Shown here: one piece after another, positions 6,192-56,355 of the stretch
Numbering within the stretch: position 1 is the first letter of the stretch
Layout: every line of letters begins with the position of its first letter
DNA from: Octopus sinensis
Taxonomy: Eukaryota
DNA length: 64,000 nucleotides
NCBI RefSeq assembly: GCF_006345805.1
Contig: NC_043005.1
Location: 103,354,001 to 103,418,000, forward strand
Direction: 5' to 3'
Notes under the pieces: model-generated
What the model saw: only the letters and a program-made list of their open reading frames with translations
Told to the model about the DNA's origin: nothing
Database searches by the model: none
Translations under genes and position numbers: made by a program

Positions 6192-6602
6192 AACAAGACG
6201 GGTAAGGGTGATTTCACTGCGTCCGTTCTGTGGGTTGGGAGACATCTGGCAGGTTGGGAACGGAAGTCCACTTTCCCCAGATCCGAAGGACAAGGAGAGG
6301 GTCACTGGCCAGAGCGTCTGGGGGGAGGGGGTTGGCATTTGCGGTGGGCGATGGATCCGTGGACAATCGTAGATGACATGCTCCACTATCTCCTCTCCCA
6401 CTCCGCACTTTCTGCAGGTTCTGTCTATGGCTAACAGGGCTCGTGGGGTCGGCTATCCTGTTTTTGACTTCATATGTCCCTTTTTGTTCGTTTGTTCTGG
6501 TAACTCATTCAATTTCATTGTAAATAATTCCATTTCATCCACACGACCCCAAATCATTGTATTGTCCCCATTTGTGTAGAACCCTTATGGGTAATAAAGA
6601 AA
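6192..6602 (+). mobile_element. Possible diverged Tx1-like 3' fragment after a (TGC)n(TTG)n repeat
   Basis: It ends in TTGTATTGTCCCC...ACCCTTATGGGTAATAAAGAAA (6557-6602), matching the Tx1 3' terminus. Protein similarity to the ORF2 C-terminus is only weak. Confidence 0.4.
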
Positions 6603-6860
6603 TTTGTCTATGGCTCGGTCGATCTTGTAGAGCCAGTACTTGAGGTCGTCTTGTTGTAGTCGAGGGCTCTTCGTTGAGGCCCGACACCACTGGGTGGTGG
6701 CCCTCGAGGTCGCTGGAAATGGACATCTCCAGGTTCAAATTCTTGGACGGCTGCTGCTGCTGTTGTTGCTGTTGTCGTCAATGATGATGATTGTGAGGAG
6801 GAGGAGGAGGAGGAGGACAGTGTTGCTTATCGCCAGATCACCCGTCATCTGTGGTCAAAA

Positions 6861-13600: not shown

Positions 13601-13601
<1 letters not shown>

Positions 13602-14100
13602 TTCTTTTATTTGCCACCAGGGTAAAGGACGAGGTGGACAATACAAAGACAGACATAAAGTGTCGGGGATTACATATGATGGAATGATAAAAATAAAAGT
13701 AAATAAGAAAGGTACTCAGTATGCATGAGTAGAAGTCAAGTATATATAGTATACAGCAATATGTAAGAAATAAAGAAACATAAAATTGTGATGGGGTCCT
13801 CCTGATACAGGTGGACTTCTAGGTATAATCGACGAATCCCACCATCCAAGATCACCCTGAATACATTTTCCAACTCCTTTCCTCTAACAAACAGGTACCA
13901 CCCTTTCTTGGCATTTTCGCAACTTTCACCCACCTTTTCATAGATTCCCTCGAGGACAGCGCCTTCCTTTCCACCCTCACTTTCCTTTTCAAGTAAAATT
14001 TTAAAAACTCGATGAGTTGCTTTACCGAACGGGAATGTTTCTGTCCTCATTCGTTTCAGCCTCGTCCACCAGACAACCTCTTTCGCTACAGCAACCAAGC
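13601..14100 (-). mobile_element. 3' fragment of a diverged Tx1 relative
   Basis: VAVAKEVVWWTRLKRMRTETF resembles VAMAKECIWWTRLKGLETNTF of the GATA-associated ORF2. The 3' end is TTTGTATTGTCC..CCCTGGTGGCAAATAAAAGAAA followed by (TTA)n. Confidence 0.75.
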
Positions 14101-14116
14101 AAAGGAAATCTACCTC

Positions 14117-14270
14117 ATTTCTTTATTGCCCACAAGGGGATAAACATAGAGGGGGCATCGACCCCGGTGCGTAACTGGTACTTAATTTATCGACCTCGAA
14201 AGGATGAAAGACAAAGTCGACCTCAGCGGAATTTGAACTCAGAACGTAACGGCAGACGAGCAGCAGCGCC
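14117..14270 (-). mobile_element. tRNA-derived SINE family 2, partial
   Basis: B-box-like GAGTTCAAATTCC, central TTTCATCCTTTCG.GGTCGATAAATTAAGTACCAG block, tail CCCTTGTGGGCAATAAAGAAA. Confidence 0.8.
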
Positions 14271-15110: not shown

Positions 15111-15273
15111 AATAAGGGCACACAGTTCGACAAGCGTTTTGCGGATGCAAACCGAGTGTTGCGTTTGCAATGTTGCGGAGCAGCTACACGCGAGAGGGCA
15201 ACGACATTACATAGTGATCGTTGTCTTTGGTTCCTGACTGTAAATATTTAAAGCATTCTTACTCTCTTCAAAA

Positions 15274-15675
15274 GACGGCGAGCTGGCAGAACCGTTAGCA
15301 CGCCGGGCGAAATGCGTAGCCGTTTTTCGTCTGCCGTTACGTTCTGAATTCAAATTCCGCCGAGGTCGACTTTGCCTTTCATCCTTTCAGGGTCGATTGA
15401 ATAAGTACCAGTTACACACTGGGGTCGATATAATCGACTTAATCCGTTTGCCTGTCCTAGTTTGTCCCCTCTGTATTTAGTTCCTAGTGGGTAGTAAAGA
15501 AATAGGTATTTCGTCTCTCTTTACGTTCTGAGTTCAAATTCCGCCGATGTCGATTTTGCCTTTTATCCTTTCGGGGTCGATATATTAAGTACGTATTTGC
15601 GTACTGGAGTCGATTTGATCGACTGCCCCTCACCCACTCCAAAAAACTCAGGCCTTGTGCCTAGAGTAGAAAAGA
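15274..15675 (+). mobile_element. SINE family 2: a full unit plus a second head-truncated unit with a different tail
   Basis: GGCGAGCTGGCAGAA..GTTAGCACGCCGGGCGAAATGC head and GTGGGTAGTAAAGAAA tail to ~15506, followed by a second B-box/central block. Confidence 0.85.
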
Positions 15676-18606: not shown

Positions 18607-18648
18607 GCACGCACAGAGAAGGAGAGAGTGAGAGAAATGAACAAATAT

Positions 18649-19955
<1,307 letters not shown>

Positions 19956-20027
19956 TGTTTCTTTATTAGCCACACAGGGCTGCACACAGATAGAACAAAT
20001 TACAAGGTAGAGCTTTTCTTTTGAAGG

Positions 20028-20064
<37 letters not shown>

Positions 20065-20135
20065 AAGGGGGAGGTTTCGATCAAAAGGGATCGTAAAAGA
20101 GAGAGAAAGAGGACAAAAGTAAGGGGGGTTAAAAA

Positions 20136-20188
<53 letters not shown>

Positions 20189-22990
20189 GGGGGGGGGAGA
20201 GGAAAAAAAAAAAAAAAAAAAAAAAATGATCAATAGGGATCGTTATCACAGAAATGTCAATATGAAGTGTAAAGGGGAGGACAGGTGAGGTTTACCCGTG
20301 GAGAAAAGCCTGCGGAAAAGACCACGGTAACCTCGGTCAATGAAGTCACATTTATATTTCTATTTTTTTTTTTTTTTTTTTGCAAATAAGCAACTCTCTG
20401 TTTCGATTTCTGGGTTCATAGGACTATGCTCAAGGTGGCTTCGTCATTCATACGTGCCATTCTTGCTACATTCACCCATCTTTTTTTAAAACATTCGCTA
20501 GACAAAACTTGCCTCTCTACTCTCACTTTCCTTTTCAAGTGGTACTTGAAGAAGTTGATGAGAGATTGACCAGAGAGGAAAGTGTTTGTCTCCAATCCTT
20601 TCAGACGCGTCCACCAGATACATTCTTTCGCCATAGCCACAAGGATGATGATGAAAATAGCTCTTCCTTCCCGTTTGAAGGAAGGAGGCGTGACAATATT
20701 GACGATAGACTCAGCTGATAAACCGACTCGTCCCACACGTGACAGCAGTTGTTCGACATAAGCCCACAGGTCGGAAATTGTTGGACACTGAACGAGTGCG
20801 TGCAGAACGGTTTCGTCGCTCTGACCGCATCTCGGGCAGGTCGGCCCCGTGTTTCTCGAGCCGTGTCTGTAGAGCTTATCCCGAACGGGTAGCGCTTCTC
20901 GGTAGCACTGCCAGGCCAGGGATCTCTGGAAGTTGTCCATGGGCCCTGGCCCGAAAGTCGTCCCGAACAGGCGGGTCAGGTACTCCTCGTCGACGTCCAG
21001 GTTCGCCCCGAGCTCGTCGTCGTACCTCCCCTCCACTAAACCCCTATAGAATGCTTTGGTTGTGTTGAAGTCACTTAAGGTCGACCCAGGACGGCAGAGT
21101 TGCTTGAGAGCAACGCGACACTCGCGGTGCCATTCGCCCTTCCTCGGCCTCTTTTTGATCCACGACTGCAGTTCGGTCATGGAGACGAGCTGCGGGAAAG
21201 CGTGCCTCACAAACGGCGACCACACCTTTCACCGTCGTCTACATAGAGCCAGAGATGTCGCAGTCTCAGCGCGTGTCTGCGCATCATCAACCACGGCATG
21301 CCCAGCCCTCCTTTTAACGGGTGTTGACAGCAAATGGATCGCCTGACCATCGGACGCATCCTTCCACAAGAAGCGAAAGAGGATGCGTTGTAGTTTGGTG
21401 ATGGTAGGGTCGGGACAAGGTACGACGGTCAGGCGGTAGTAGATGACGGACGCGATGTACGTGTTCGCCACCTCCGCTCGACCTTTTAGGGACAGTTTCC
21501 TCTCGGCCCATTGCCGGGCGAGAGTGACCACCCTACTCGTTATCTCGTTCCAGTTCTTCTCCACTTGGAGGTCCGGACCAAACCAGACCCCGAGCAACTC
21601 AACGGGCCGTCGGTCCAGCGTCCCACGACGGAGGCGCTGGTGGACGGCATGGGCTTGCTTCTCCAGGTGCCTAGTCGCAAGCCCACTGACTTTTCCCGGT
21701 TGATTTTCGCTCCTGTCACCGCTTCGTAGTTTTTCAGTGTCTCGCCGACCAGCTCGATGTGCTCGTGGCTAGACACTATGACGGTGACGTCGTCCGCGTA
21801 TGCAGACACGCTCGTCCCGCATCCCAATTCTCGCGGGATGCCCCTTAGAGTCGCCAGCTTCGCAGCAGTAGTGGCTCAAGAGTCAAACGTATAGAAGCGC
21901 CGAGAGGGGGCATCCCTGACGGACCGAACGTGCAATGTCGAAAGGTCTCGATAGATGTCCATTTACGCGAATTACCGAACGGATGCCTCTGTACAAGGCA
22001 GCTATCCAGCCGCGGAAGACGGGACCGAAACCAGCCGCTCTCAGGACTGCCTCCAAGTATCGATGGTCTACCCTATCAAAGGCTTTTGATTGATCCAAGT
22101 TGATCAGGGCCCCACCCATGCCAGGTTCGTTAACTACCCTGTCTATGATGTAGCGCATCAGATGGAGGTTGTCATGGATGGTCCGGCCTGGCACGGCGCA
22201 TGTTTTGCGCCTTGTCGACCAGTTTCTCGATGACAAGCGCCAACCTCTTGGCTAGCACCTTGGCCAAAATTTTCAAGTCTGCATTAAGCAGAGTGATGGG
22301 CCTAAAGTTATCTATTACATTTCCCTTGTTTAGATCTTTCTTCAGCAGTGTTACGGCTCCTCGGCTCACAAAACCAGGAATGCTCCCGTTTTGCTGCCAG
22401 TTGCAGTACACCGCCGCCAAGAGATCTCCAAACAAGTCTGGCATACAATTGTAAAGCTCGTAGGGTAGACCATCCAAACCCGGTGATTTGTCCCTCGAGC
22501 ATTCTGCCATCGCTTCCCGCACTTCCGCCGCCGTGATGGCACCTTCGCAGCACCCTGCCTTTCTTGTCGAGAGTCGTGGTAGGCTATGTAGGTAGGCACT
22601 GAAGTCCACCCTACGTTCTTGCCCTCCACTCGTTCCGAACAGTCGGGCAAAATGCTGCTGAAAGGCCTCACACATTTTACTTGGCTCGAGCAATTCGCGC
22701 CCCTGTTCATCTACCAGTGACCGAATGGTGGCTTTGTTGCCCTGTTGCGCCTCTGCCACCCGGGCCTCTCTCGCGGCTCCAACACCTTCGTTCCTTAGAG
22801 CACGCATCCTAGCTCTGACAGCACATCCTTCGTGTTTGGCGTTGAAGTGTTGGTCGAGGGCCAACCTCGCCGCCAAAACGTCGGATGCGATGCCGCTTCT
22901 AATTGCCTCTTCTAGCTTCTTAACTAGCTCACCCTCTACTCTATTTCTATCTATGGCTAGTGCTTTGCTGTACCTAATCGCTTCTGCTTA
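19956..22990 (-). mobile_element. Tx1-clade LINE copy A, 5'-truncated within ORF2, in (GATA)n
   Basis: RT motifs DQSKAFDRVDH, VRQGCPLS and YADD; C-terminal CPRCGQSDETVLHALVQC; 3' UTR ending AATAAAGAAAC; (TATC)n on both sides in element sense. Confidence 0.93.
20416..22990 (-). pseudogene. ORF2 (RT + C-terminal zinc knuckle) of copy A, frameshifted as assembled
   Basis: ORF-track pieces 22172..22876, 21883..22236, 21540..21827, 21229..21597 and 20416..21225 are colinear parts of one L1/Tx1 ORF2. Confidence 0.9.
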
Positions 22991-23607
<617 letters not shown>

Positions 23608-23904
23608 CTTCTTTTATTAGCCACACAGGGCTGAATACAGAGGGGACAATACAAATGCAGAGCTTTTCTTTTCGAGGGTGGAAAAAATAAAAAAATGTAA
23701 GATTGCGATCAAAAGGGATCGAGAGGAGGAAAAAAAAGGAAAAAAAAAGAAATCGTGTATCACAGAAATAATGGTGTAACATTGATTAACAAGATTTGGG
23801 TTCATCCGTGGGAAGAAAAGCCTACAGAAAAGACCACGGGAACCCCAGTCAGGGAGGAAATAAACACATGAGGTCAAAAATGCTCTCTTTTTTCTTTTTA
23901 CGAT

Positions 23905-26900
23905 CTACAGGATCATGCTCAAAATGGTTTCGTTACTAGCACGCACCATCTTTGCAACATTCACCCATCTTTTTTTGAATCTTTCGCGAGACAAAACTTC
24001 CCTCTCCATTCTCACCTTCCTTTTCAAGTGGTACTTGAAAAAGTTGATGAGCGATTGGCCAGAGAGGTAAGTGTTTGTCTCTAATCCTTTCGCTCGAGTC
24101 CACCACACACATTCTTTCACCATGGCCACCAGTACGATGAAAACTGCCTTGCCTTCCCGGTTGAGGGAAGGGGGCGGAGCAATTCTCACGATAGACTCGG
24201 CCGATAGGCGGATTCGTCCCACACGTGACAGCAGCCGTTCGGCATAAGCCCACAGGTCGGAAATGGTTGGACATTGCACGAGTGCGTGCAGAACGGTTTC
24301 GTCGCTCTGACCGCATCTCGGGCAAGTCGGTCCAGTGTGTCTGGAACCGTGTCTGTAGAGCTTATCCCGAACAGGTAATGCTTCTCGATAGCACTGCCAG
24401 GCCAGGGATCTTTGGTGATTGTTCATAGGTCCCGGCCCGAAAGTTGTCCTGAACAGGCGGGTCAGGTGTTCCTCGTCGACGCCCAGACTCTGCCCGAGTT
24501 CGTCGTCGCACCTCCCCTCCACTAATCCTCTATAGAATGCCTTTGTTGTGATGGAGTCGCACAAGTTCGATCCCGGACGGCAGAGTTGCTTGAGAGCAAC
24601 GCGACACTCACGGTGCCATTCGCCTAGCCTCGGTCTCTGCTTGATCCATGACTGTAGTTCGTCCAAGGAGACGAGCTGCGGGAAAGCGCGCCGCCAAAAG
24701 GCGACCCCCTGTTCACCGTTGTCTATGAAGCGCCGGAGATGTCGCAGTCTCAGCGCATGTCTGCGCATCATCAAACCACGCATGCCAGCCCTCCATTTAG
24801 CGGGTGTTGGCAGCAAATGGATCGCCTAACCATCGGAACGTTTCCCTTCCACAAGAAGCGGAAGAGTATGCGTTCCAGTTTGGTGATGGTAGGGTCGGGA
24901 CAAGGCACGACGGTCAGACGGTACTCGATGACGGATGCGATGTACGCGTTCGCCACCTCCGCCCGACCTTTTAGGGATAGCTTTCTCTCAGTCCATTCTG
25001 GGTGAGAGTAGCCACCCCTAGTCGTTATCTCGCCCCAGTTCTTCTCCATTTGGAGGTCCGGACCGACCGAACCAGACCCCGAGCAATTTAACCGGTCCGT
25101 CCGTCCAGCGTCCACGATGGAGACGCTGTTGGACGGCATGGGCTTGCTTCTCCAGGTGCCGAGCCGCAAGCCCACTGACTTTCCCGGTTAATTTTTGCTC
25201 CCGTTACCGCTTCGTATTCTTTCAGTGTCTCGCCGACCAGCTCGATGTGCTCGTAGCTCGACACTATGACGGTGACGTCATCCGCGTATGCAGACACGCT
25301 CCTCCCGCATCCCAGCTCTCGTGGGATGCCCCTCAGCGTCGCCAGTTTCCGCAGTAGTGGCTCAAGAGTCAGTACATACAGCAGCGATGAGAGGGGGGCA
25401 TCCCTGACGAACCGAACGCATGATGTTAAAAGGTCTGGATAGATGACCATTTACGCGAACTACTGAGCGGATGCCGCTGTATAGGCAGCGATCCAACCGC
25501 GGAAAACTGGACCGAAACCAGCCGCTTTGAGGACAGCCTCCAAGTAGTGATGGTCTACCCTATCGAAGGCTTTGATTGATCCAAATTGATCAGCGCCCCA
25601 CCCATGCCAGGATTTTTAACTACCCTGTCTATGATTGTAGCGCATCAGATGGAGGTTGTCATGAATACTTCTACCCGGCACGGCGCATGTTTGCGCCTTG
25701 TCGATTAGTTCTTGATGACAAGCGCCAACCTCTCGGCTAACACCTTGGCCAAAATTTCAAATCTGCGTTGAGCAGAGTGATGGGCCTGAAATTATCTATG
25801 ACGTCCCCCTTGTTTGGGTCTTTCTTGATCAGTGCCACTGCTCCTCGCTTTACAAAAGCAGGAATACTCCCGTTCTGCTGCCAGTTGCAGTAGACAGCTG
25901 CCAAGACGCCTCCAAACAAGTCTGGCATATGAAAATAAAATTCGTAGGGCAGACCATCCAAGCCTGGTGACTTGTCTCTCGCGCAGCCTACCATCGCATC
26001 TGTACGTCCGCAGCTGTGATAGGCTTTTCACAAGACTCCACCTCCCTTGCTGAGAGTCGTGGCAAGGCATGCAGGTAGGCACTAAAGTCCACTCTGCTTT
26101 CTGACTCACCACTTGTCCCAAACAGTTGGGTGAAGTGTTGTTGAAAAAACCCAACACATCCTTTTAGGCTCGAGCAATTCGCGCCCCCTGTTCATATAAG
26201 AGACTTGATGTGGCTCTGTTGCCTCGTTGCGTCTCCACCACTCGGGCCTCTTGGGCGGCTCCAACTCCTTCGTTCCTCAGAGCACGCATCCTAGCTCTGA
26301 CAACGCATCCCTCGTGTTTGGCGTTGAGGTGTTGGTCGAGGGCCAATCTCGCCGCCAGTACGTTGGACGCGATGCCAGTTCTAAGTGCCTCTTCTAAAAC
26401 CTTAACTAATTCTCCCTCTACTCTATTTCGGTCTAATGCTAGGGCTCTACTGTATCTGACTGATTCTGCTTAATCGCTTTTTTTAGGGCATACCACCATC
26501 TGTTGTTGATGATGGTACCCGTTAAAGCTCTCTTAACTAATGTGCTGATCCGGTCCCTGTAAACCTGTCGTGCTGTAAAAGACGCGTTCAGTTTCCAGTA
26601 ACAGGACCCTGCCTATGTGTCTTATCTAAGTCAAGTGTACAAGTCAAAACTTGTGATCTGTGTAACTGACTATATGAAATTGTGGACAACCTACACTATT
26701 TTTATCTATTGTCCTACAGAATACTCTATCTAAGTATGATCTGGACGACCCGATGCGGTTACTCCATGTCCACATTGGCACATTCGGGTGGTCCAGTCGG
26801 TACCTGTCAGACAGTTGGAAACGTCTGAGCAGGTCTTTGAGGCATTTGCATCCCCTTCTATTGCTATCTCTGCCCACGTAGTCTAGATGCGTGTCCAGGG

Positions 26901-27334
26901 TGGCATTCCAATCCCCCACTAAAAGTAAAGGACGAGACGTTCCCATGAAAGACTCTAGACGTCGAAAGAAATCTGGTCGGCCTGTTAAGGACGGAGCAAG
27001 CATAACTGCTATCAGTCGAAAAGCACACTCATTGCTGCCATCGACATCCAAAACGACCAGCCTACCCTCCGGGTCTAGGAAATTTGCTCTTACTTTGAGA
27101 TCCAGACTCTTCCGGATAAGCACCGCGGTGCCACCTCCGCCCATTCTCGGTGACACGGAGAAAAATAAATGTTGAAATGTGTACCGAAAATGTGCTGGAG
27201 TGCCCGCAAGCTGTGGAGTCTGGTCTCACTGATGGCTATGATATTCAGATTTAGTGACTTGATGTCATTTAACAGGTAGCCTTGTTTCCAAGGCGACCCC
27301 AAGCCACGTACATTTATACTACTATTCTGAGCAT
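23905..27334 (-). pseudogene. ORF2 of copy B: APE endonuclease, reverse transcriptase and C-terminal zinc knuckle (several 1-bp frameshifts as assembled)
   Basis: EN motifs INVRGL, IAISET, GGGTAVL, LVGDWNATLD, SYLDRVF, YTDH; RT motifs NFRPITLLN and SAYADD; CPRCGQSDETVLHALVQC; stop at 23905. Confidence 0.92.
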
Positions 27335-27374
27335 GTTCCGATAAAAGTGCAAAAAAGGAAAAGGAGAGAGAAAA

Positions 27375-29510
27375 GGTTACTGTCTTTCGAAAGTTCTTTG
27401 TCTTTCACCTCACGGTCTTCTTCTATGAGGCTTTTGTACAGTTTTTTTGATGAGTACTTTTGAAATCTCCCTACTGCATCAGGGTAAAGAGATTTCAGGG
27501 TGTGTATGTGTTCTGTGTCACGTGTATTATTTTAATGTGTTGTGGTGGTGTTGTGTGTGGGTGGTTACTTGTTTTATGTCGTTTTCAGTAATGTTAGTGT
27601 TTGACCTAATGTGTTCCATTAGGTCGTGGTTGTTTGTGTTTATGGCTTGTCAACATTTTTGGGGGGTTTGATGATGGTGTGTTTGTGTTGATGTGTGTTT
27701 TTCTGTGGATGTTTTTGTTTCGGGAGTGGTGTATCTTCCCGCTTTGTTGTTATTTTTTCTTTTCTTTTTTTCCCCTTTTCTCTCCCCCCTGTGGCTATTG
27801 CCCAATCTTCTTCGTGTCTTCTTCGTCTAATGACAGATCAGACGAATCGGAGTCTGGAAGAGGGAAAGTATTGGGGTCTATTGTCGACTGTGTTGGTTTT
27901 GTTGTTGGTGTTGGTTGGTGAGCGTTTGGTTGTGGTGTTGTATGGTTTGGATGTGGGGTTTGGGTATTTTGTGTTTGAGTGATTGTGGGTATTGTTGTGT
28001 TGTTTAGGGTGTCAATTTGTGGGGATTTGGAGTTGTAATTGTTTCTTCATTTATGCTGGGTGTCTTTTTGGCAGATGTTCCTTGGTTTGGGAGTTGGTAT
28101 ATTCTTGGTTGTGTGTTGGTGATGCTGCTTCTGTTCTTGGTGCTGCAGTTGGTGTGGTTGTTTGTTTGTGAGGTTTGTTCCTGCAAAAAGTGGTGTGGGT
28201 AGTAAACCTTGTTTATTTGTTTTTGTTTCCGGCTGCTGTTGTTGTTGCTGTTGTTTCTTGCGGCAGATTTGCAGTCTTTTTTGAGATGTTGCTCACTGCC
28301 GCATATGTAACAACGTGGTCTTCTGCCATCGACGACCACATATAAACTTGTGGTCGTCTGATACACATATCTGGGTGGGTATTTTTTTATATCTTCATGA
28401 TTTATGTAGAAGAAGAAATCTATTTTCTTTCCCACCCAGTTTTTATGCTCTGTGACTGTGGTTTCCAAAATAGTATAATTCGCCATTTTACGCATAAAGC
28501 CTTTAAAAGCCATAGACTATTGGCTATTTTGGGGACATTGTTTAGAGTGATCTTAGTCACTTTCTGTCCCCGATAGCTTGGTGTAAGTTGGAGTCATCTG
28601 AGTGAAGAGTTAGCGTTGAGAAATGTCTAGCTAACTCTTCGGTGTAGAAAACGACTTGTATGTGGGCAAATTTGTTCCACCAGGTTACATATTCTTTGTG
28701 ATCCCAGATGGGTTTTCAAGCACTTCTCTATTTTGCCTGTGTTGGCCTTCTCTGGGATTTTGTTTTTTTTTGTTAATATTTTATAAATGATTGTTCGTCT
28801 TTTTCATTTTCCAAAATATCTTCTGGTATGTTAATTTTACGATACCTTCTGATTCTGTTATTTTGATGTTCGTGTCCTGTAATTGTTGAGCCGTAAGTAT
28901 ATTGTTGTTTTTTTCTTTAATCGCCTCAGCGAAATTTGTTGTTTGTTTGTTATTGTTGTTGCTTGTGGTGATGTTGTTGTTTGCTGCAGTTTGTAAAATT
29001 GGTTGTGTAGGTTCGATCGTGCAAGTAGGAAGGGGGTGGAAAATTGCCTGCGTACTTTAGTCCTGCACTAGGGCAAAATTCGACATTTCGTTTGCTTGTC
29101 GTCGTTATTTTTTCACTTGTGGTGATGGAGGAGGCAGTGGTTGAAGGGAATTGTTGTTGTCGTCGTCGTTGTTGTTGTTGTTATTGTTCGTTCTTGGTGA
29201 CGGCGGTGGTGTTGGTAGTATTAGTAGCATTGACAGCACGGTCTTTGGTGACCGGTGATGGTGATGTTATTGGTGGCGATTATCTTAGTAGGATAGCAGT
29301 TTTAGTAGCAGATTCTGCCATGGGTGTGGTGGTGGTGGTGGACTCACTGATGGTGTTGACGGTGCTTGGCCTTGCGACCTTTGTTTTGTATTTGTTGCTG
29401 TTGGTGGGGTGGAGTTGTCAGGTTCGGCGTATGCTAACAGGCCATCCTGTTTTTCTGTTCTGCGTCACGCTTTCACTTGCAAACTTAGCCTCGTGGTGGC
29501 CAGTGGCCAT
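27375..29510 (-). pseudogene. ORF1 (gag-like nucleic-acid-binding protein) of copy B, disrupted as assembled
   Basis: CX2CX4HX4C knuckle CYICGSEQHLKKDC in ORF 28004..28513; T/N/Q-rich low-complexity flanks; boundaries approximate. Confidence 0.75.
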
Positions 29511-29725
29511 TTTGGAAATAAAATGGCTAAATGAAACCACGAAGGCTATGAGAATTTTTCTTTTAAATTTTGCCCACAAGGGCAAAATTTTGTTTGATGT
29601 TTATCAAAGGTTTACAGTGGATGTTGTTGTACAACTTAAGCAAAAAATGTTTGTCAATATACACTTTTAAATAGTCAAAATAATGATTACCTTCGGAGCC
29701 GAAACGAAATCACATCCGTCAGTCA

Positions 29726-30870
<1,145 letters not shown>

Positions 30871-37800: not shown

Positions 37801-37850
37801 GTGTGTGTGTGTGTATGCGCATATACATGTATGAAAATATGTATTTAGAT

Positions 37851-38253
37851 TTCTTATTTCTTTATTGTTTACAAGGGGCTAAACATAGAGGGGACAAACT
37901 AAGACAGACAAAGGGATTAAATCGATTATACTGACCCCAGTGCGTAACTGGTACTTAATTTATCGATCCTGAAAGCATGAAAAGCAAAGTCGACCTCAGA
38001 ACGTAACGGCAGACGAAATACCTATTTCTTTACTACCCACAAGGGGCTAAACACAGAGCGGACAAACAAGGACAGACAAACGGATTAAGTCGATTACATT
38101 GACCCCAGTGCGTAACTGGTACTTAATTTATCGACCTCGAAAGGATGGAAGGCAAAGTCGACCTCGGCGGAATTTGAACTCAGAACGTAACGGCAATCGA
38201 CATACCGCTAAGCATTTCGCCCGGCGTGCTAACAGTTCTGCCAGATTGCCGCC
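37851..38253 (-). mobile_element. SINE family 2: a full unit (38023-38253) plus a head-truncated second unit (37851-38022)
   Basis: tRNA-like head, central block, and a 3' tail matching the Tx1 3' terminus in both units. Confidence 0.87.
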
Positions 38254-39000
38254 TTATGTATTTAGGTTTCTGCGAGTATGTATATGTATGTATATATGCG
38301 TATGAAAGATGTATTTATATACATACATATGTAACGTATACATACACGTGTGTGTGTTACTGTTTGATTTTTCTCTCTCTTAGGGAGTGTGTACCTGTGT
38401 GCACGTGTATGTAATACATATCACCATAAATTTAAACCTGTTCGAGTTTTTCAATAATCGGTAAAAAAGAAACAAATTTCTAAAATTGCATTCATAAAAG
38501 CTTGATGACATTTTCTGTACCTTCAAATTATAGTCAACTAAAAGTAGATATCTGAAGGTATTATAAAATATATATAACGTCTTTGGTGATTTAAAGCTAC
38601 AAAAATTTTGAAATACTATCGATACAATTTTCTCTATAGATAAACTGCGTTGTAACGTAATACTCCGCTTTACGTTTGTAACGCTAGCTACGAGATATCT
38701 TACTTTAGTCATAGCATAAATTGATAAATCTTATGTAATGCGAGAATACCTTTATGTATGTACAGATATATCTGCAAGTGCATATACATGTGCATGTGTG
38801 AGGAGTGTATGTGTGTGTATGTGTGTATGTACGTATGTATATGTGTACATATGTTTATAGAGAGGGATATACATGCATATATATGTGTGTGTGTGTGTGC
38901 GTGTGTGTATGTGTGTGTGTACACAGGGAGGGAGAGAGAAAAGGAGAGACCAGGAAAAAAGAAAGAAACAAAAAAAGGAAGAAAAATCAGGCAGAGAGAC

Positions 39001-39279
<279 letters not shown>

Positions 39280-39934
39280 TGTTTCTTTATTAGCCACACA
39301 GGGCTGCACACAGATAGAACAAATTACAAGGTAGAGCTTTTCTTTTGAAGGTTTAAAAAAAAAAAAAAAAAAAAAAGAAGGAAGGGGGAGTTCGATCAAA
39401 AGGGATCGTAAAAGGAGAGAAAGAGGACAAAAAGAAAGGGGGGTTAAAAAAAAAGGGGGAGAGGAAAAAAAAATTGATCAATAGGGATCGTTATCACAGA
39501 AATGTCAATATGAAGTGTAAAGGGGAGGACAGGTGAGGTTTACCCGTGGAAAGAAAAGCCTACGGAAAAGGCCACGGTAACCTCGGTCAATGAAGTCACA
39601 TTTTATATTTCTTTTTTTTTTTTTTTTTTTTTTGCAAATAAGCAACTATCTGTTTTCGATTTCTGGGTTCATAGGACTATGCTCAAGGTGGCTTCGTCAT
39701 TCATACGTGCCATTCTTGCTACATTCACCCATCTTTTTTTAAAACATTCGCTAGACAAAACTTGCCTCTCTACTCTCACTTTCCTTTTCAAGTGGTACTT
39801 GAAGAAGTTGATGAGAGATTGACCAGAGAGGAAAGTGTTTGTCTCCAATCCTTTCAGACGCGTCCACCAGATACATTCTTTCGCCATAGCCACAAGGATG
39901 ATGGAAATAGCTCTTCCTTCCAGTTTGAAGGAAG
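39280..39934 (-). mobile_element. Tx1 copy C: ~650-bp 3' fragment nearly identical to copy A, in (GATA)n
   Basis: Encodes AMAKECIWWTRLKGLETNTFLSGQSLINFFKYHLKRKVRVERQVLSSECFKKRWVNVARMARMNDEATLSIVL*, identical to copy A; GATA repeats on both sides. Confidence 0.93.
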
Positions 39935-39991
39935 ATGGATAATCAGATAGATAATTAGATAGATAGATAGATAGATAATTAGATAGATAAT

Positions 39992-40085
<94 letters not shown>
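39935..40085. repeat. (GATA)n array between copies C and D
   Basis: Direct reading; includes GATAATTA variants. Confidence 0.95.
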
Positions 40086-40086
<1 letters not shown>

Positions 40087-40393
40087 CTTTTTATTGTAGC
40101 CACACAGGGCTAAACACAGAATAAAAATGGACGAAATACAATGTAGAATTTTTTCTCTTCGAGGTGGGATGGGTGGGGCAAGAAGAAAAAAAAAAAAAAA
40201 AAAAAAAAACGTTTGATCAATAGGGATCTGTGGGTTGTGTGGTGTATAAAAAAGCAATATATATATATATATAAGGTTCACAGTTTAGGTGTAGTCTTGG
40301 AAAGAAAAACCTACAAAAAAGACCAAGGTCACCTCAGGCAATTCGAAAAAGAACACATGAGTAAGTCGCCTTACTTCTCGTTGTCTCTTTTGG

Positions 40394-42156
40394 TTACAGA
40401 TTTATGCTTAAAATAGTGTCGTCTTTCATACTGACCATTTTTGCCACTTTTACCCACTTTTTATTAAAACATTCGTTCGACAAAGCCTTCCTCTCTATTC
40501 TCATCCTCCTTTTCAAGTGGTACTTGAAAAAGTTGACGAGAGACTGACCAGAGAGGAAGGTGTTTGTTTGCAGTCCTTTCAAACGCGTCCACCACACACA
40601 TTCTTTCGCCATAGCCATCAGCGTAACGAAAACCGTTTTCCCTTCCCGTTTAAAGGAAGGTGGTGGAACAATATTCACAATAGACTCGGCCGATAGGCGA
40701 GCCTGACCTACACGTGACAACAGCTGTTCGACGAAGGACCACAGCTCTGAAATATCTGGACACTGCACGAGTGCGTGCAGAACGGTTTCGTCGCTCTGAC
40801 CGCATCTCGGGCAGGTCGGTCCGGTGATGGTTTTCGAACCGTGTCTGTAGCTCTTCTCTCGAACAGGTAGTGCGTCTCGATAGCACTGCCAAGCCAGGGA
40901 TTTCTGAAGTTATCCATAGGCCCGGCACGAACGTCGTCCTGAACTGGCGGGTTAGGAATTCCTCGTCGACGCCCAGGTTTGCCCCGTGTGTCGTCGGACC
41001 TCCCCTCCACTAGTCCTCTATAGAACGCTTTAGTCGTTTGGAAGTTGCACAAGTTTGACCCCGGTCGGCAGAGCTGCTGTAGAGCTTGGCGACACTCTCG
41101 GTGCCAATCGCCCAGTTTCGGTCTCTTTTTGATCCACGTTTGCAGTTCGGTCAGTGAGACGAGCTGCGGGAAGTCGCGCCTCACAAACGGCGCCCACACC
41201 TGTTCACCGTCGTCGATGATTTCCAGAGATGTCGCAGTCTCAGCGCATGCCTGCGCATCATCAACCACGGCATGCCCAGTCCTCCATTCAACGGATGTTG
41301 ACAGCAAATGGACTTCCTCACCATCGGAACGCCACCCTTCCACAGGAAGCAGAAGAGTATGCGTTCCAGTTTGGTGATGGTGGCGTCGGGACAAGGTACG
41401 ACGGTCAGGCGGTAATCGATGACGGATGCGATGTACGCGTTCGCCACCTCCGCCCGGCCTTTTAGAGACAGCTTTCTCTCGGCCCATGTTTGGCTGAGAG
41501 CGACCACTCTACTCGTGATCTCGTCCCAGTTCTTATCCATTTGGAGGTCCGGACTGAACCAGACCCCGAGCAATTTAACCGGTCCGTCCGTCCAGCGTCC
41601 CACTCCTGAGCCGCAGTCGGACGGCATGGGCTTGCTTCTCCAGGTGCCGAGTAGCAAACCCACTGACTTTTCCGGGTTAATCTTTGCTCCCGTCACCGTT
41701 TCATATTTTCTTAGTGTCTTGCCGACCAGCTCGATGTGCTGGTAGCTCGACACTATGACGGTGACATCGTCCGCATATGCCGACACGCTCGTCTCGCAAC
41801 CCAGTTCCCGTGGGATGCCCCTCAGTGTCGCCAGCTTCCGCAGTAGCGGCTCGAGAGTCAATACATACAGAAGCGCCGACAGGGGACACCCCTGACGGAC
41901 CGAACGCGTGATGTCAAACGGTTTAGACAGGTGACCGTTTACCCGAATCACCGATCGGATGCCGCTATACAAGGCAGCGATCCAACCGCGGAAGACGGGA
42001 CCGAAGCCAGCCGCCAAGTACCGATGGTCGACCCTATCGAAGGCTTTAGACTGATCCAAATTTATCAGCGCCCCACCCATGCCAGGATCCTTAACTACCC
42101 TGTCCACAATGTAGCGCATCAGATGGAGGTTGTCATGTATGGTTCTGCCCGGCACG
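40394..42156 (-). pseudogene. Truncated ORF2 (RT C-terminal part + zinc knuckle) of copy D
   Basis: ORF 41181..42155 has DQSKAFDRVDH, VRQGCPLS and YADD; ORF 40394..40768 is the C-terminus. Confidence 0.9.
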
Positions 42157-43471
42157 AGAAAACATTTGTCTTCTCGTCAGTGTTTTCTGTCTTTTTAATT
42201 GTCGTCCTGGGTGTGGGTGTGGGTCGATTTTTTGAAGATTCAACAAGTTTAATTGGTTGTGACGTCAACGGTGATTGTGTTGGTACTGTTTTTCTTGGTG
42301 ATGTTGTTGGGGTTTGTTGTTTTTCTTGGCGTTGTTCCATAATTGAGTGTGTTGGTGTTGGTGTTGGCAACAAAGGGATTTTATTTGTTTTCTGAATTGT
42401 TCTTTCTTGTTTTTTCTGTACCAGATCGCACTTGGCAATCAAATGTTCGGGGCTGCCACATTTGTAGCATCTAGGCTTTTTGCCTTCTGCCATAACATAT
42501 AGGCATTGCCCATTCTCCAAGTATATCTTGTCGGGTAGGCTCTCGATAGAGGCCCCCTCAATCTGGATGGTCACAACTACTGTTTTTCCACCCCAATTGT
42601 CGTTTAGGTACACGGCTGTTTCTAGAATATTGATCTTTTTCAAGTGGTAACAGATTGCCCCTGTTATCCATTTGTTCGGCATATCGGGGGGTACATTTCT
42701 GATAGTAATTCTACTCACCCTCTGGTTTTTATAATAAGGGACCATGATGATTTCATCATTTCCCAGAGACTCAGTAGAGTGAGCTTTTGCCACTTCCTGG
42801 TTAGGGAAGCGGACCACTACTGTGTTAAACTGGGGACCCCAGTTTATATACTCTTTTCTTTCATTATGTTTTTTAAACATTTCTCCACATCAGTTTTTGT
42901 AATCTGTTCATTTGGTTTTTTGTTTTTTCTAATAATTATATACAATTGTCTTATTTTCAATTTCTTGTTTTATATGTTGGGTGTATGCAGGACTAAATCT
43001 TGTCCACGGGTTGTAAAGAGAGCTCTTGTTTCTATGAGCTCTTCATTTGTGAATGTAACAATCTCCTTTTTCTGGCGAAGAATATCTGCGAAATTTACTG
43101 TTGTTGACTTTTGTATTAGCATCTTCACTATTAGATAGTTCATTTTTATTGTTGTCTTGTGTTGCTGTTGTTTTTGTCAATAGTTTTCGTTTCAGTTTTA
43201 TTTTTATCATTTATGTTGTCGTGGTAGTGGTGGTGGTGGTGGTGGAGGTGGTGGTGGTAGCAGTTATTGTCTCGTGGTTGCTGTTGTTAGAGGTGGTGGT
43301 GGCGGTGGTGACAGGGCTGTTAACGCACGTGGTTGCAGCGTTCCTTTCACCGAATTTCACGTTGGCATTTTCCGTGCGAACGTTCTTTTTTTTCTCTGTC
43401 GTTTCCAGACTAGGAAAATTTTGTTCCAAAAGAGAACGCGACCAGCGTTCAACAATAAAATTTCTAGACAT
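42157..43471 (-). pseudogene. ORF1 of copy D (T-rich N-terminus, RRM-like region, CCHC knuckle), 3'-deleted
   Basis: ORFs 43211..43471 and 42119..42880; CX2CX4HX4C motif. Confidence 0.78.
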
Positions 43472-43668
43472 TTTCTAATGTCGAGAAGAAAATAACAGAA
43501 ATGAAATGGGGTCGAAACTGCCCTAGGGGCGAATTCCTCCTTGGAAAATCACTCAAACGAAGTTGGTTGCCTTACACACCTTATTTGCAAAAATCTACAC
43601 AAAAATTGGCCTATAAATAGTCAAAATAAATGATTACCTTCGGAGCTGAAACGACATCACATCCGTCA

Positions 43669-43896
<228 letters not shown>

Positions 43897-44019
43897 TCAG
43901 ATATTTTTGTTAACCACACAGGGCTGCACACAGACGGGACAGATCACAAAGTAGAGCTTTTCCTTTTGGGGAGAAAAGAAGAAAAAAAGTGGGGTAGTTT
44001 TTCAATCAAAAGGGATCGT

Positions 44020-44020
<1 letters not shown>
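43897..44020 (-). mobile_element. Tx1 copy E: ~125-bp 3'-UTR-only fragment in (GATA)n
   Basis: CCACACAGGGCTGCACACAGA...GTAGAGCTTTTC...TCAAAAGGGATCGTAA matches the 3' UTR of copies A/C; GATA on both sides. Confidence 0.88.

Positions 44021-44100
<80 letters not shown>
44021..44100. repeat. (GATA)n array at the 5' truncation side of copy E
   Basis: Direct reading. Confidence 0.95.
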
Positions 44101-53872: not shown

Positions 53873-55244
53873 CATACATACATACATCTTTGCTTCATTC
53901 TAACAAGATATTCTGAAAATGATATGAAAACAGCACAAACATGAAAATGCTAATTTTATTAAATAAAACACTTTCACTTTATTAACTTCTCTGTTGATTA
54001 CTTTCTATTCAGTAGGGGCATACGTATATATGTAAGAAATGTATTTATATAACGGTGTGGATGTGTACGTGTGTGTATGTCTGTGTATGTTGGTTAGCCT
54101 AACTCAGAGCGAAACTCTGAGTAGGCAATCTTTTTTTTTCGTATAATAAACATTTATTTCCATTCTACCCAGCCTATTGAATTCCATATCAATGTTTAAA
54201 CTAAGTAAAATATATATTATTTTTTTATATAATTTACAACTGTTACCTTAAGATATATGTGTGTATGTAAGTGTATTCATGCATGCATGCTCTTATATAT
54301 GCGTGTGCTGGGATGATGTTAACTAACCACGCATAAACCACATATACCTAAGTACGTGTGTTTATGCTTTCATGCTTAGTTCGTCAAAGAAGTAAATATA
54401 AACACTCGCATATTCAGACTTTGATACATACATACGAACATACATACCCACATGCACATATATATATATCATGCACACACATTAACATTCACATACATTT
54501 CCCACATTATACCTTCGTTTCACATTCTTCAAAGACATACACAAAAGCTACTAAGCAACCAAAAACTGGAAACCTACGCACCAAAGTTTACCTGAATGAC
54601 GTCATCGCTGTTGGAGACGCAGCTAAGGACATTGCCTTGTCATGAAGCTATGGAAACGGAACATGGAGGAATGATGTTATCAAAGACAACTGCATCAATA
54701 GAATTGTCTCCTGTCTATAGATTAGAAACAGATAAAAACTGAAAATCAGAAAACATCAAATAAATAACAAACCAATAAATTATGGTGGTATGCAGATCCG
54801 TGATCAGAATGTTCAAATATATTTTTATTTCGGAACAAATCTAATTAAAATTTTGTAGAAAAAATGGACGTCTGAGAGAGTACAAGCATGGCTAGGTGGT
54901 CGACGAACCTGGAAATTTGTTACAGAGGTTGAGAGTTCTTATCTTTTTAATAGAAGTAATTTTTATTCTGGGCCCCACAAACCTTACAGTAGATATCAAT
55001 TACGCACAGTTAGCACTGTGTAGATGACATAGTTCATTGCTGTTTATCTGAAAGCTAAACAGGATGTCGTTCGACCTACAAGAAAAAGCAGCAAAACTTT
55101 CCTCAAATAACACATTGACTCGTAAAATATAGAACTGCCTTAGATTGATAAAGCCTTGATATAACAAAATAATTGGATAGACACACCTGAACTGCTATCG
55201 TTCATACCTTTGACTAGGGTCAAATAAATAACAACAAATATCAT

Positions 55245-55375
55245 TTTCTACTCTAGGCAAAACGCTTGAAATTTTAGGGGAGGAGGCCAGTCGATTAGAT
55301 CGACTCCATTACGCAACTGGTACTTAATTTATTCATTCCGAAAGAATGAAAGACAAAGTCGAGCTCGGCGGAAAT
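55245..55375 (-). mobile_element. SINE family 2-related partial copy with the alternative tail
   Basis: Central block GCAACTGGTACTTAATTT..GAAAGAATGAAAGACAAAGTCGA; tail like that at 15620-15675. Confidence 0.7.
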
Positions 55376-55944: not shown

Positions 55945-56248
55945 TGTTTGTTCCTTCTCGAGCCCTCCCGGGCTCATAAGGGCCGGTTTCCCGGTTTCCT
56001 TGGCGTATACATTCCCCACCTGGACGCGACGCCGGTCCGTCGCAAGTGAGCTGCAAGATGCAGGAGGAAAGAGTCAGAGAAAGTTGTGGCGAAAGAGTCA
56101 GCAGAAGTTTCGCCATTACCTTCTGCCGGAGCTGCGTGAAGCTTAGGTGTTTCGCTCATAAACACACACATTATCCGGTCTGAGATTCGAACCCGCCATC
56201 CCTCGACCGCGAGTCCACTTCTCTAACCACTAGGCCATCTGCTTCCAC
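55945..56248 (-). mobile_element. tRNA-derived SINE with a V-domain-like block
   Basis: Minus-strand head TGGCCTAGTGGTTAGAG..GGCGGGTTCGAATCTC; GCGACGGACCGGCGTCGCGTCCAGG resembles the V-SINE central motif (recalled, not searched). Confidence 0.65.
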
Positions 56249-56252
56249 TATA

Positions 56253-56355
56253 AAGTCGACTTCGGCGGAATTTGAACTCAGAACGTGAAGAGCCGGAGGA
56301 AGTACCTCGATGCGGTTTGCCCGGTGTGCTCACGATTCTGCCCCGCTCGCTGCCA
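56253..56355 (-). mobile_element. SINE family 2-related head fragment
   Basis: AAAGTCGACTTCGGCGGAATTTGAACTCAGAACGT. Confidence 0.6.

What the first reader, a model, noticed from the sequence alone, without database searches (positions are those of the whole stretch)
37851..38070. An abundant tRNA-SINE ends with the same ~45-nt 3' terminus as the Tx1 elements (candidate SINE/Tx1 partnership)
Seen: on the + strand, copy B 23609-23649 (TTCTTTTATTAGCCACACAGGGCTGAATACAGAGGGGACAA) and SINE 38025-38065 (TTTCTTTACTACCCACAAGGGGCTAAACACAGAGCGGACAA) match at 32/41 ungapped by hand alignment. The same tail occurs at 14118, 15465-15503 (opposite strand) and 37857. Established: SINEs mobilised by stringent LINEs (L2, CR1, RTE) share the LINE 3' end, while mammalian L1 partners rely on poly(A). 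Inference: this Tx1 group recognises its 3' end stringently and mobilises SINE family 2. The SINE copies here are not in GATA arrays, so their driver may be a less specific sister lineage.
Basis: partly seen in the sequence, partly recalled or inferred. Interest (0 to 1): 0.75.

Follow-up and report, generated by a model that had tools for sequence, protein, structure and literature searches.

The report
Octopod SINE shares LINE 3' tail
A common short mobile element in this octopus-like genome ends with the same ~48-base sequence as a group of L1/Tx1-like LINE retrotransposons, which is the usual sign that the short element borrows the LINE's copying machinery; this is a well-known kind of partnership seen here with an unusual LINE group.

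Summary
In a scan of every 41-mer of the window on both strands, background never exceeds 24/41. Every hit of 28 or more is one of four SINE tails or one of six LINE 3' ends.

The LINEs have an apurinic-type endonuclease, a reverse transcriptase and a zf-RVT zinc finger. Their nearest solved relative is human L1 ORF2p. Five copies lie in (TATC)n arrays in one orientation. A sister copy ends in (ATT)n, and a 171-nt 5'-truncated copy lies at an ordinary site with an 11-bp target-site duplication (TSD).

The last ~50 nt is the only conserved part of the LINE 3'UTR. It recurs in related LINEs from sequencing-run assemblies and in Argonauta hians. There, two SINE families with unrelated heads also carry it, at about 25 tails in 20.8 kb. 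It can fold into a small hairpin with compensatory stem changes.

SINE copies have 10-17 bp TSDs at dispersed AT-rich sites, not in GATA arrays. The neighbouring GATA-specific copies are therefore unlikely drivers, and a less specific sister lineage is more likely.

Tx1-clade membership is supported only by elimination. The tRNA origin of the window's SINE head was not confirmed, and mobilisation is inferred. I rate this a new member of a known kind, of moderate interest.

The parts
38024..38254 (-). Full-length SINE unit (S4). It has a Pol III-like head, a body and the 48-nt tail at 38024-38072. It is the first unit of a dimer.
37855..38023 (-). Second SINE unit of the dimer (S3). It starts at about SINE position 50, and its terminal tail lies at 37856-37904. 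This is the region the finding points to.
38255..38271 (-). 5' copy of the 17-bp TSD (AGAAACCTAAATACATA) flanking the whole S4+S3 dimer. The 3' copy lies at 37838-37854.
15272..15503 (+). Full-length SINE unit (S2) with its tail at 15455-15503. It is followed at 15504-15677 by a truncated unit that carries a different tail. A TSD (ATTCTTAYYCTCTTCAA) flanks the whole dimer.
14117..14258 (-). 5'-truncated, internally deleted SINE copy (S1) with its terminal tail at 14117-14168.
23607..29721 (-). LINE copy B, 6.1 kb, with a full-length 5' end and degenerate ORFs. It encodes an ORF1 with a CCHC knuckle, an APE, an RT and a zf-RVT finger. The 3' tail is at 23608-23656, flush with (TATC)n.
19956..22988 (-). 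LINE copy A, 5'-truncated, with RT and zf-RVT. The 3' tail is at 19957-20005, flush with (TATC)n.
40086..43668 (-). LINE copy C. It has the same 5' terminus as B and carries RT and the C-terminal region, but no APE was detected. The 3' tail is at 40087-40141, flush with (TATC)n.
39280..39933 (-). LINE copy D, a 654-nt 5'-truncated copy inside a (TATC)n array. The tail is at 39281-39329.
43901..44020 (-). LINE copy E, a ~120-nt 5'-truncated copy inside a (TATC)n array. The tail is at 43901-43949.
13601..14105 (-). LINE copy F, a 5'-truncated member of a sister family, ~70% DNA identity in the C-terminal coding region. The tail at 13601-13648 runs straight into the (ATT)n array at 13539-13601.
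6433..6603 (+). Copy G, a 171-nt 3'UTR-like fragment with the same tail (6556-6603). It lies at a non-microsatellite site and is flanked by the 11-bp TSD TGTCTATGGCT (6422-6432 and 6605-6615). It may represent a LINE lineage with relaxed target choice.
22989..23606 (.). One of the (GATA)n/(TATC)n arrays that border every GATA-family LINE copy. The others are at 18645-19955, 29727-30867, 39001-39279, 39933-40085, 43669-43896 and 44021-44100.

Best explanation
The last ~48 nt of this SINE (5'-...TTGTTTGTCCCCTCTGTGTTTAGCCCCTTGTGGGTAGTAAAGAAAT-3') are homologous to the 3' terminus of a group of APE-encoding, L1/Tx1-like LINEs of octopods.

What is shown:
- The block sits at the very end of both kinds of element.
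- It is the only conserved part of the LINE 3'UTR.
- It is kept in LINE families with different targets: (TATC)n, (ATT)n and no microsatellite.
- It is kept in two octopod genomes.
- It is carried by SINE families with unrelated heads.

What is inferred:
- The block is the RNA handle that the LINE reverse transcriptase binds to start target-primed reverse transcription (a 'stringent' LINE). It is probably a small hairpin with a 4-bp G/C stem and a CUUGU loop, sitting on a U-rich/A-rich lower helix that includes AAUAAA.
- By carrying this handle, the SINE RNA is copied by that enzyme.
- None of these copies ends in a poly(A) run, so reverse transcription seems to start at the tail itself.
- SINE copies sit at dispersed AT-rich sites with 10-17 bp TSDs, whereas the neighbouring LINE copies sit only in (TATC)n. 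The SINE's driver is therefore most likely a sister lineage with relaxed target choice, such as the one represented by copy G at 6433-6603, and not the GATA-specific copies next to it.
For: Specificity:
Background is at most 24/41 over all 41-mers of the window, and all ten hits of 28 or more are SINE tails or LINE 3' ends.
- The best SINE-versus-LINE local alignment is end-to-end at the 3' termini, with z = 7-11 against shuffles.

LINE identity:
- Pfam finds Exo_endo_phos, RVT_1, zf-RVT and an ORF1 zinc knuckle.
- The RT is nearest to human L1 ORF2p (1e-19) against R2 (1e-10).
- The endonuclease matches L1 endonuclease (7e-6 to 1e-4). No R1Bm or TRAS1 endonuclease match appears at E up to 10.

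Tail conservation:
- In a MAFFT alignment of nine LINE 3' ends, mean pairwise identity was 0.59 in the last scored 20-column window (columns 201-220). In the ten scored windows upstream it was 0.07-0.49.
- The same tail occurs in an Argonauta hians LINE (56% amino-acid identity to copy B) and in relatives from sequencing-run assemblies.

SINE side:
- In 20.8 kb of Argonauta there are about 25 tails. They belong to a homologue of the window's SINE and to a short SINE with a different head that gives weak tRNA matches.
- A LINE with ~50% amino-acid identity and a different 3' end (L003) has no such tail.

Structure:
- The proposed helix pairs in 80.5% of cells, against 41-57% when the partner columns are slid.
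- The apical stem varies as AGCC/GGCU, ACCC/GGGU, GACC/GGUC, AACC/GGUU, GCCC/GGGU and GGCC/GGCU around a constant loop.

Target sites: SINE TSDs of 10-17 bp lie at non-microsatellite sites.

Precedents: shared SINE/LINE tails (PMC3747384), a stringent L1 lineage in monocots (PMC3472496) and Tx1-mobilised SINEU (PMC4494074).
Against: - No mobilisation was or could be tested.
- All LINE copies in the window are defective, and the SINE copies differ from one another by 11-13%, so current activity is unknown.
- None of the SINE insertions is in a GATA array, so the LINE copies actually seen beside them are poor candidates for the driver. The proposed relaxed-specificity lineage is represented only by one 171-nt fragment.
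- Only two independent SINE insertion events in the window have this tail at their free 3' end. The Argonauta sample is a single 20.8-kb locus.
- RNAalifold predicted no consensus structure.
- Covariation of the 12-pair helix is not above column shuffles.
- Single-sequence fold z-scores are mostly weak.
- The hairpin registers were chosen by eye.
- 3' ends of CR1, RTE, L2 and Dong-R4 LINEs of this genome were not available for comparison.
Confidence: 0.72

Rival explanations
1. The tail is truly LINE-derived but is now only a relic. The SINE was, or is, mobilised by another LINE, for example through the alternative tail seen on the second unit at 15504-15677, or by a LINE clade not sampled here.
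For: The same SINE body occurs with a second, different tail at 15650-15677 and 55240-55267. In two of the four copies the tail is internal to a dimer. SINE copies are 11-13% diverged. Other LINE clades (RTE, CR1, Dong-R4) are reported as active in Octopus vulgaris (PMC13282606).
Against: The tail is terminal and directly followed by TSDs in S3 and in many Argonauta copies. It is kept nearly intact in roughly 25 copies in 20.8 kb of Argonauta, in two SINE families. That pattern suggests repeated use rather than a passenger sequence.
Confidence: 0.12
2. The GATA-specific LINEs seen in the window are themselves the drivers. The SINE lands elsewhere because target choice for a short foreign RNA is looser, for example set by microhomology between the SINE 3' end and TAT-rich DNA.
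For: Most Argonauta SINE copies continue ...GAAATCTAT, which resembles the LINE/array junction ...GAAACATATCTATC. Several TSDs start with TAT, TTAT or ATAT. In crocodilians, SINEU-1 and SINEU-2 show only weak target preference although Tx1-Mar is site-specific (PMC4494074).
Against: Five of five GATA-family LINE copies are in arrays, while no SINE insertion is. The octopus SINE tail is slightly closer to the non-GATA tails (F, G and Argonauta, 85-87%) than to the GATA-family tails (77-81%).
Confidence: 0.1
3. The direction of transfer is reversed: a SINE-borne 3' module was captured by the LINEs, for example by template switching. The sharing would then reflect LINE evolution rather than SINE parasitism.
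For: Sequence similarity alone does not give a direction.
Against: The module is present at the exact 3' end of LINE families only 39-74% identical in protein sequence, with three different target types, and in two octopod lineages. It is contiguous with LINE-specific 3'UTR sequence and no SINE body lies upstream. Even if this were true, the functional reading of a shared recognition handle would be unchanged.
Confidence: 0.04
4. The similarity is a chance match of AT-rich, low-complexity sequence.
For: The tail contains AATAAAGAAA and T-rich runs, which are common in this AT-rich genome.
Against: Background 41-mers reach at most 24/41, against 28-36 for the ten real sites. No dinucleotide shuffle out of 2000 reached the observed score. 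The position coincides at both 3' termini, and the pattern recurs in Argonauta.
Confidence: 0.01

Closest known systems
UnaSINE1/UnaL2 of eel and other stringent SINE/LINE pairs (Ohshima and Okada; Kajikawa and Okada 2002; reviewed in PMC3747384)
   Same: The SINE carries the last tens of nucleotides of a LINE, there is no poly(A), and the conserved 3' block can form a small stem-loop. Several SINE families can share one LINE tail.
   Different: The partner here is an L1/Tx1-like LINE, not an L2, CR1 or RTE element. No short terminal repeats are seen at the 3' end. Mobilisation has not been tested.
SINEU mobilised by Tx1-Mar in crocodilians (Kojima 2015, PMC4494074)
   Same: A proposed partnership between SINEs and site-specific Tx1-clade LINEs, in which some SINE families show weaker target preference than the LINE.
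   Different: SINEU has snRNA-derived heads and poly(A) tails, and no LINE in Repbase matched its 3' half. The link rested on shared target sites and shared 5' sequences. Here the link is a shared 3' tail, and the target sites differ.
Monocot L1 lineage with a conserved 3' end shared with maize and sorghum SINEs (Ohshima 2012, PMC3472496)
   Same: An L1-group LINE with a conserved, structured ~45-nt 3' end that SINEs share. This implies stringent recognition within the L1 group.
   Different: That case is in plants. It is not microsatellite-specific, and the sequences are unrelated.
Kibi and Koshi, the (TC)n- and (TTC)n-specific Tx1 elements of fish, and the (TTCC)n/(TTTC)n-specific crocodilian Tx1 families (Kojima and Fujiwara 2004; PMC4494074)
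   Same: APE-type LINEs inserted in one orientation into microsatellite arrays.
   Different: The targets here are (TATC)n and (ATT)n. The hosts are octopods. No SINE partner with a shared tail was described for those families in the papers I could read.
Octopus SINEs OK, OR1 and OR2 (Ohshima and Okada 1994)
   Same: Abundant SINEs of octopus described as tRNA-derived.
   Different: I could not obtain their sequences (SINEBase supplements are not held). Whether the window's SINE is one of them is unknown.

Membership tests
SINE with a LINE-derived 3' tail (stringent SINE/LINE pair) | The SINE 3' end is homologous to the 3' end of a LINE, terminus to terminus, beyond chance. | tested here: met
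   32-36/41 against a background of at most 24/41. The best local alignments lie at both 3' termini, with z = 7-11.
SINE with a LINE-derived 3' tail (stringent SINE/LINE pair) | The tail is conserved among related LINEs more than the rest of the 3'UTR. | tested here: met
   Mean pairwise identity was 0.59 in the last scored 20-column window, against 0.07-0.49 upstream, across nine LINE ends from three sources.
SINE with a LINE-derived 3' tail (stringent SINE/LINE pair) | The SINE head derives from a Pol III-transcribed RNA (tRNA, 5S or 7SL) with an internal promoter. | tested here: inconclusive
   ARAGORN and Rfam find no tRNA in the window's SINE. By eye there is a B-box-like GAGTTCAAATTCC and acceptor-stem remnants. 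The short Argonauta SINE with the same tail gives sub-threshold tRNA matches of 18-22 bits.
SINE with a LINE-derived 3' tail (stringent SINE/LINE pair) | Copies are dispersed and flanked by TSDs. | tested here: met
   TSDs of 10-17 bp occur in the window and in Argonauta.
SINE with a LINE-derived 3' tail (stringent SINE/LINE pair) | The SINE shares the insertion-site preference of the proposed partner LINE. | tested here: not met
   This applies to the GATA-specific copies: five of five LINE copies are in (TATC)n arrays and no SINE insertion is. The feature is compatible only with the lineage of copy G, which has an ordinary TSD.
SINE with a LINE-derived 3' tail (stringent SINE/LINE pair) | Tail-dependent trans-mobilisation by the LINE proteins. 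| not testable with these tools
   This needs a retrotransposition assay.
Tx1 clade of non-LTR retrotransposons | An APE-type endonuclease plus an RT belonging to the L1 group. | tested here: met
   Pfam finds Exo_endo_phos, RVT_1 and zf-RVT. The best solved relatives are the human L1 ORF2p RT (1e-19) and L1 endonuclease (7e-6).
Tx1 clade of non-LTR retrotransposons | Target-sequence-specific insertion. | tested here: met
   Five copies lie in (TATC)n in one orientation, and B and C share a 5' terminus next to the array. Sister copies end in (ATT)n in the window and in Argonauta.
Tx1 clade of non-LTR retrotransposons | The RT domain groups with Tx1 references, not with L1 proper, in a phylogeny (RTclass1-type test). 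| not testable with these tools
   No Tx1 reference sequence or named homologue could be retrieved.
R1 clade (the other APE-type target-specific LINE group) | Endonuclease and RT nearest to R1Bm, TRAS or SART. | tested here: not met
   No match to R1Bm or TRAS1 endonuclease chains at E up to 10, while L1 endonuclease matches.
Dong/R4, the microsatellite-specific LINEs with a restriction-like endonuclease | A restriction-like endonuclease downstream of the RT, and no APE. | tested here: not met
   An APE domain lies upstream of the RT in copy B, and a zf-RVT finger lies downstream.
Poly(A)-dependent SINE of relaxed L1 type (Alu, B1, SINEU) | A 3' poly(A) or A-rich tail, with no LINE-like 3' sequence. 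| tested here: not met
   Copies end ...AATAAAGAAAT and are followed directly by the TSD. There is no A run.

The most novel reading that the evidence does not exclude
Octopod SINEs make up about 11-12% of the Octopus vulgaris genome and are mostly 'unclassified' in current annotations. The novel reading is that many of them are driven by Tx1-clade LINEs through a conserved 3' stem-loop. This would be the first animal L1-group lineage shown to recognise its template stringently and to share its tail with tRNA-type SINEs. The microsatellite-specific and the dispersed lineages would then use the same RNA handle but different endonuclease specificities.
Probability: 0.35. Interest if true: 0.65.

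Novelty: new member of a known kind. Interest (0 to 1): 0.5.

Why it matters
SINEs are one of the largest components of octopus genomes and have been linked to octopus brain transcripts. The octopus repeat papers I could read list L1-Tx1 families and mostly unclassified SINEs, and they name no partner LINE (PMC13282606, PMC8967140, PMC9115989).

A shared, conserved 3' handle would give a testable candidate for the engine behind that expansion.

It would also add an animal case to the view that the L1 group was originally 'stringent' and that poly(A)-only recognition in mammalian L1 is derived (PMC3472496).

Finally, it would offer a natural system in which a single RNA handle is paired with endonucleases of different target specificity.

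Tried and rejected
- I scanned the metagenome contigs with the degenerate tail pattern.
- I re-ran the C-terminal protein search at a looser E-value to find named distant relatives. It returned the same 11 hits.
- I took 20 full-length representatives from the exhaustive HMMER search and looked up their cluster names, hoping for 'Transposon TX1' labels. None carries an informative name.
- ARAGORN and Rfam on the SINE head gave no tRNA call. ARAGORN on the Argonauta locus gave none either.
- RNAalifold on the 28-tail alignment predicted no consensus structure.
- SINEBase supplementary sequences and the octopus genome paper are not held, so OK, OR1 and OR2 could not be compared.
- A full-text search for six tail and body sequence strings found no paper.
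- Two LINE relatives gave contigs that stop before the tail, or no record at all.
- A LINE from an unidentified ENA assembly with ~50% amino-acid identity (L003) has a different 3' end. It served only as a negative control.
- No other LINE clade with a long ORF was found in the window to serve as a CR1, RTE or L2 comparison.

Full report
**What is at the coordinates**

The region 37851-38070 lies inside a head-to-tail pair of SINE units on the minus strand.
- The first unit is full length, at 38254->38024.
- The second unit, at 38023->37855, starts at about SINE position 50.
- The pair as a whole is flanked by a 17-bp TSD, AGAAAYCTAAATACATA.

Read 5'->3' on the element's own strand, it is ...TTGTTTGTCC(G/C)CTCT(G/A)TGTTTAGCCCCTTGTGGGTAGTAAAGAAAT.

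Two further copies of the tail are present. One is at 15455-15503 on the plus strand, again as the first unit of a dimer. The other is at 14117-14168 on the minus strand, in a 5'-truncated copy.

**Check of the observation**

I compared the SINE 41-mer with every 41-mer of the window on both strands.
- Unrelated sequence never exceeds 24/41.
- The ten sites scoring 28 or more are the four SINE tails and six LINE 3' ends.

The best local alignment of the whole SINE with each of the three long LINE copies falls on the last ~50 nt of both partners. Against 2000 dinucleotide-preserving shuffles the scores have z = 7-11, and none of the shuffles reached the observed score.

**What the LINEs are**

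The window holds five related copies on the minus strand, each bordered by (TATC)n arrays on the element's strand.

| Copy | Coordinates |
|---|---|
| A | 22988->19956 |
| B | 29721->23607 |
| C | 43668->40086 |
| D | 39933->39280 |
| E | 44020->43901 |

- B and C begin with the same sequence (TGACGGATGTGAT.TCGTTTC.GCTCCGAAGGTAATCATT) right next to the array, so their 5' ends are complete.
- The broken reading frames encode an ORF1 with a CCHC knuckle, an apurinic-type endonuclease, a reverse transcriptase and a zf-RVT zinc finger.
- Copies A, B and C are 82-84% identical to one another.
- Among solved structures, the RT is nearest to human L1 ORF2p (1e-19, against 1e-10 for R2). The endonuclease fragment matches L1 endonuclease (7e-6 to 1e-4). 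It does not match the R1Bm or TRAS1 endonucleases.

According to Kojima and Jurka (PMC4640811), APE-type target-specific LINEs belong to the Tx1 or the R1 clade. Octopus repeat annotations list L1-Tx1 families (PMC13282606, PMC8967140). Tx1 is therefore the best assignment, but only by elimination. I could not obtain a Tx1 reference or a named homologue for a tree.

**More members of the tail group in the window**

- Copy F (about 14105->13601) is a 5'-truncated member of a sister family. It is ~70% identical to the others in the C-terminal coding region. Its tail runs directly into an (ATT)n array.
- Copy G (6433-6603, plus strand) is a 171-nt fragment that resembles these 3'UTRs and ends with the same tail. 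It lies at an ordinary site and is flanked by the 11-bp TSD TGTCTATGGCT.

**Evidence from elsewhere**

The closest protein relatives come from unidentified metagenome and sequencing-run assemblies. Named hits are from Octopus bimaculoides and Argonauta hians, so the window is from an octopod.

The Argonauta LINE is 56% identical in protein to copy B. It ends ...GTCCCCTCTATGTTTTTGCCCTTGTGGCTAATAAAAGAAAT and is followed by ATT repeats. A second truncated copy in the same locus does the same. Relatives from sequencing-run assemblies end with the same motif, one of them in (TATC)n.

In a MAFFT alignment of nine LINE 3' ends, mean pairwise identity is 0.59 in the last scored 20-column window. In the ten scored windows upstream it is 0.07-0.49.

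A LINE of ~50% amino-acid identity from another assembly has a different 3' end and no match to the tail model.

**SINEs in Argonauta**

The 20.8-kb Argonauta locus contains about 25 matches to a covariance model of the tail. They belong to at least two SINE families.
- One is homologous to the window's SINE from the B-box region onward.
- The other is a ~150-nt element with an unrelated head. That head gives sub-threshold tRNA matches in each of three tandem copies.

Several SINE families sharing one LINE tail is the pattern described for established SINE/LINE pairs (PMC3747384).

**Structure of the tail**

Most tails can form the same fold.
- The apical part is a 4-bp stem closing a CUUGU loop. 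In the GATA family the loop is CUGUGU.
- Below it is a helix between UCUGUGUU and AAUAAAGA.

On the 28-sequence alignment, 80.5% of cells pair in this register, against 41-57% in slid registers. Covariation is not above column shuffles, and RNAalifold predicted nothing.

Across families the apical stem reads AGCC/GGCU, ACCC/GGGU, GACC/GGUC, AACC/GGUU, GCCC/GGGU and GGCC/GGCU. These are compensatory changes, but I chose the registers by eye. The hairpin is therefore plausible rather than shown.

**Target sites**

SINE copies with clear TSDs (10-17 bp) lie at non-microsatellite sites. The TSDs mostly begin with T/A-rich sequence such as TATATT, TTATTT, ATATAC or TTTTA.

None of the SINE insertions in the window is in a GATA array, whereas all five GATA-family LINE copies are. 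Only two SINE insertion events in the window have this tail at the free 3' end, so the contrast rests mainly on the Argonauta copies.

The consensus octopus SINE tail is slightly closer to the tails of F, G and the Argonauta LINE (85-87%) than to the GATA-family tails (77-81%). The differences are small.

**Interpretation**

It is shown that the SINE tail and the LINE 3' terminus are homologous, terminal, specifically conserved and reused by more than one SINE family.

It is inferred that the block is the template-recognition handle of a stringent L1/Tx1-like reverse transcriptase and that the SINEs are copied through it. This follows from established work on other SINE/LINE pairs (Kajikawa and Okada 2002, as cited in PMC4494074 and PMC3747384).

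The driver is probably a sister lineage with relaxed target choice, not the GATA-specific copies next to the SINEs.

The main rivals are these: the tail is a relic and another LINE does the work; the GATA-specific LINEs drive the SINE off-target; or the LINEs captured the module from a SINE. Chance is excluded.

**Comparison with what is known**

- Shared tails are textbook for L2, CR1 and RTE partners.
- Within the L1 group, a stringent lineage with SINE partners is known in monocots (PMC3472496).
- A Tx1-SINE partnership was proposed for crocodilian SINEU. There it rested on target sites and 5' sequences, with poly(A) tails and no shared 3' tail (PMC4494074).
- I found no paper that reports this tail or names a partner for octopus SINEs. 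Repbase entries and the 1994 octopus SINE sequences could not be checked.

I therefore rate it a new member of a known kind, of moderate interest.

Noticed in passing
window 37855-38254 (-) and 15272-15677 (+): Both full-length SINE units are followed head-to-tail by a unit starting at about position 50, with an identical junction (...AAAGAAAT/AGGTATTTCGTCT...). TSDs flank the whole dimers, so dimers were inserted as single units. A dimeric master element seems to exist.
   Followed up: partly
window 15504-15677 (+), 55240-55373 (-); L008/L009 1-29: The same SINE body also occurs with a second tail (...AGGCCTTGTGCCTAGAGTAGAAAAGAAT). Its hairpin has the same CUUGU loop but a swapped stem (AGGC/GCCU). 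It resembles an internal 3'UTR piece (AAGGCCTCGTGCCTT) of the divergent LINE in L003. This may be a second, related LINE handle.
   Followed up: partly
window 18645-30867 and 39001-44100: Five LINE copies of one group sit in (TATC)n arrays of 0.08-1.3 kb, all in the same orientation. This looks like a (GATA)n-specific lineage. I found no such target listed among the microsatellite-specific Tx1 families in the papers I read.
   Followed up: partly
window 13539-14105; L001 about 4801-4848 and 11141-11210: A sister LINE family ends directly in (ATT)n repeats, both in the window and twice in Argonauta. Target switching between microsatellites seems to have happened within one LINE group.
   Followed up: partly
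window 40086-43668 (-): LINE copy C shares only its first ~55 nt and its last ~1.9 kb with copy B. The ~1.45 kb in between does not align to B at the DNA level. It holds its own ORF with a CCHC knuckle, and no APE domain was detected. It is either internally rearranged or a chimera.
   Followed up: no
window 56150-56342 (-): A truncated head of the SINE abuts another tRNA-like sequence (GGCCTAGTGGTTAGAG...GGGTTCGAATCTCAGACC). ARAGORN does not call it. It is probably a different SINE family.
   Followed up: no
protein P0004: A 466-aa ORF2 fragment of this octopod LINE group is labelled in NCBI as coming from a Herbaspirillum metagenome-assembled genome. Other close relatives sit on 1-2 kb contigs of ENA and JGI metagenomes. 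This looks like host DNA contamination.
   Followed up: no
L001 (Argonauta hians) 4906-5356: Three copies of a ~150-nt tRNA-like SINE lie in direct tandem, each ending with the shared tail. Overall the 20.8-kb locus holds about one tail per 0.8 kb.
   Followed up: partly
window 20030-20215 (-): The 3'UTR of LINE copy A contains very long T runs and a C run that are much shorter in copies B and D. This is homopolymer expansion inside the UTR.
   Followed up: no
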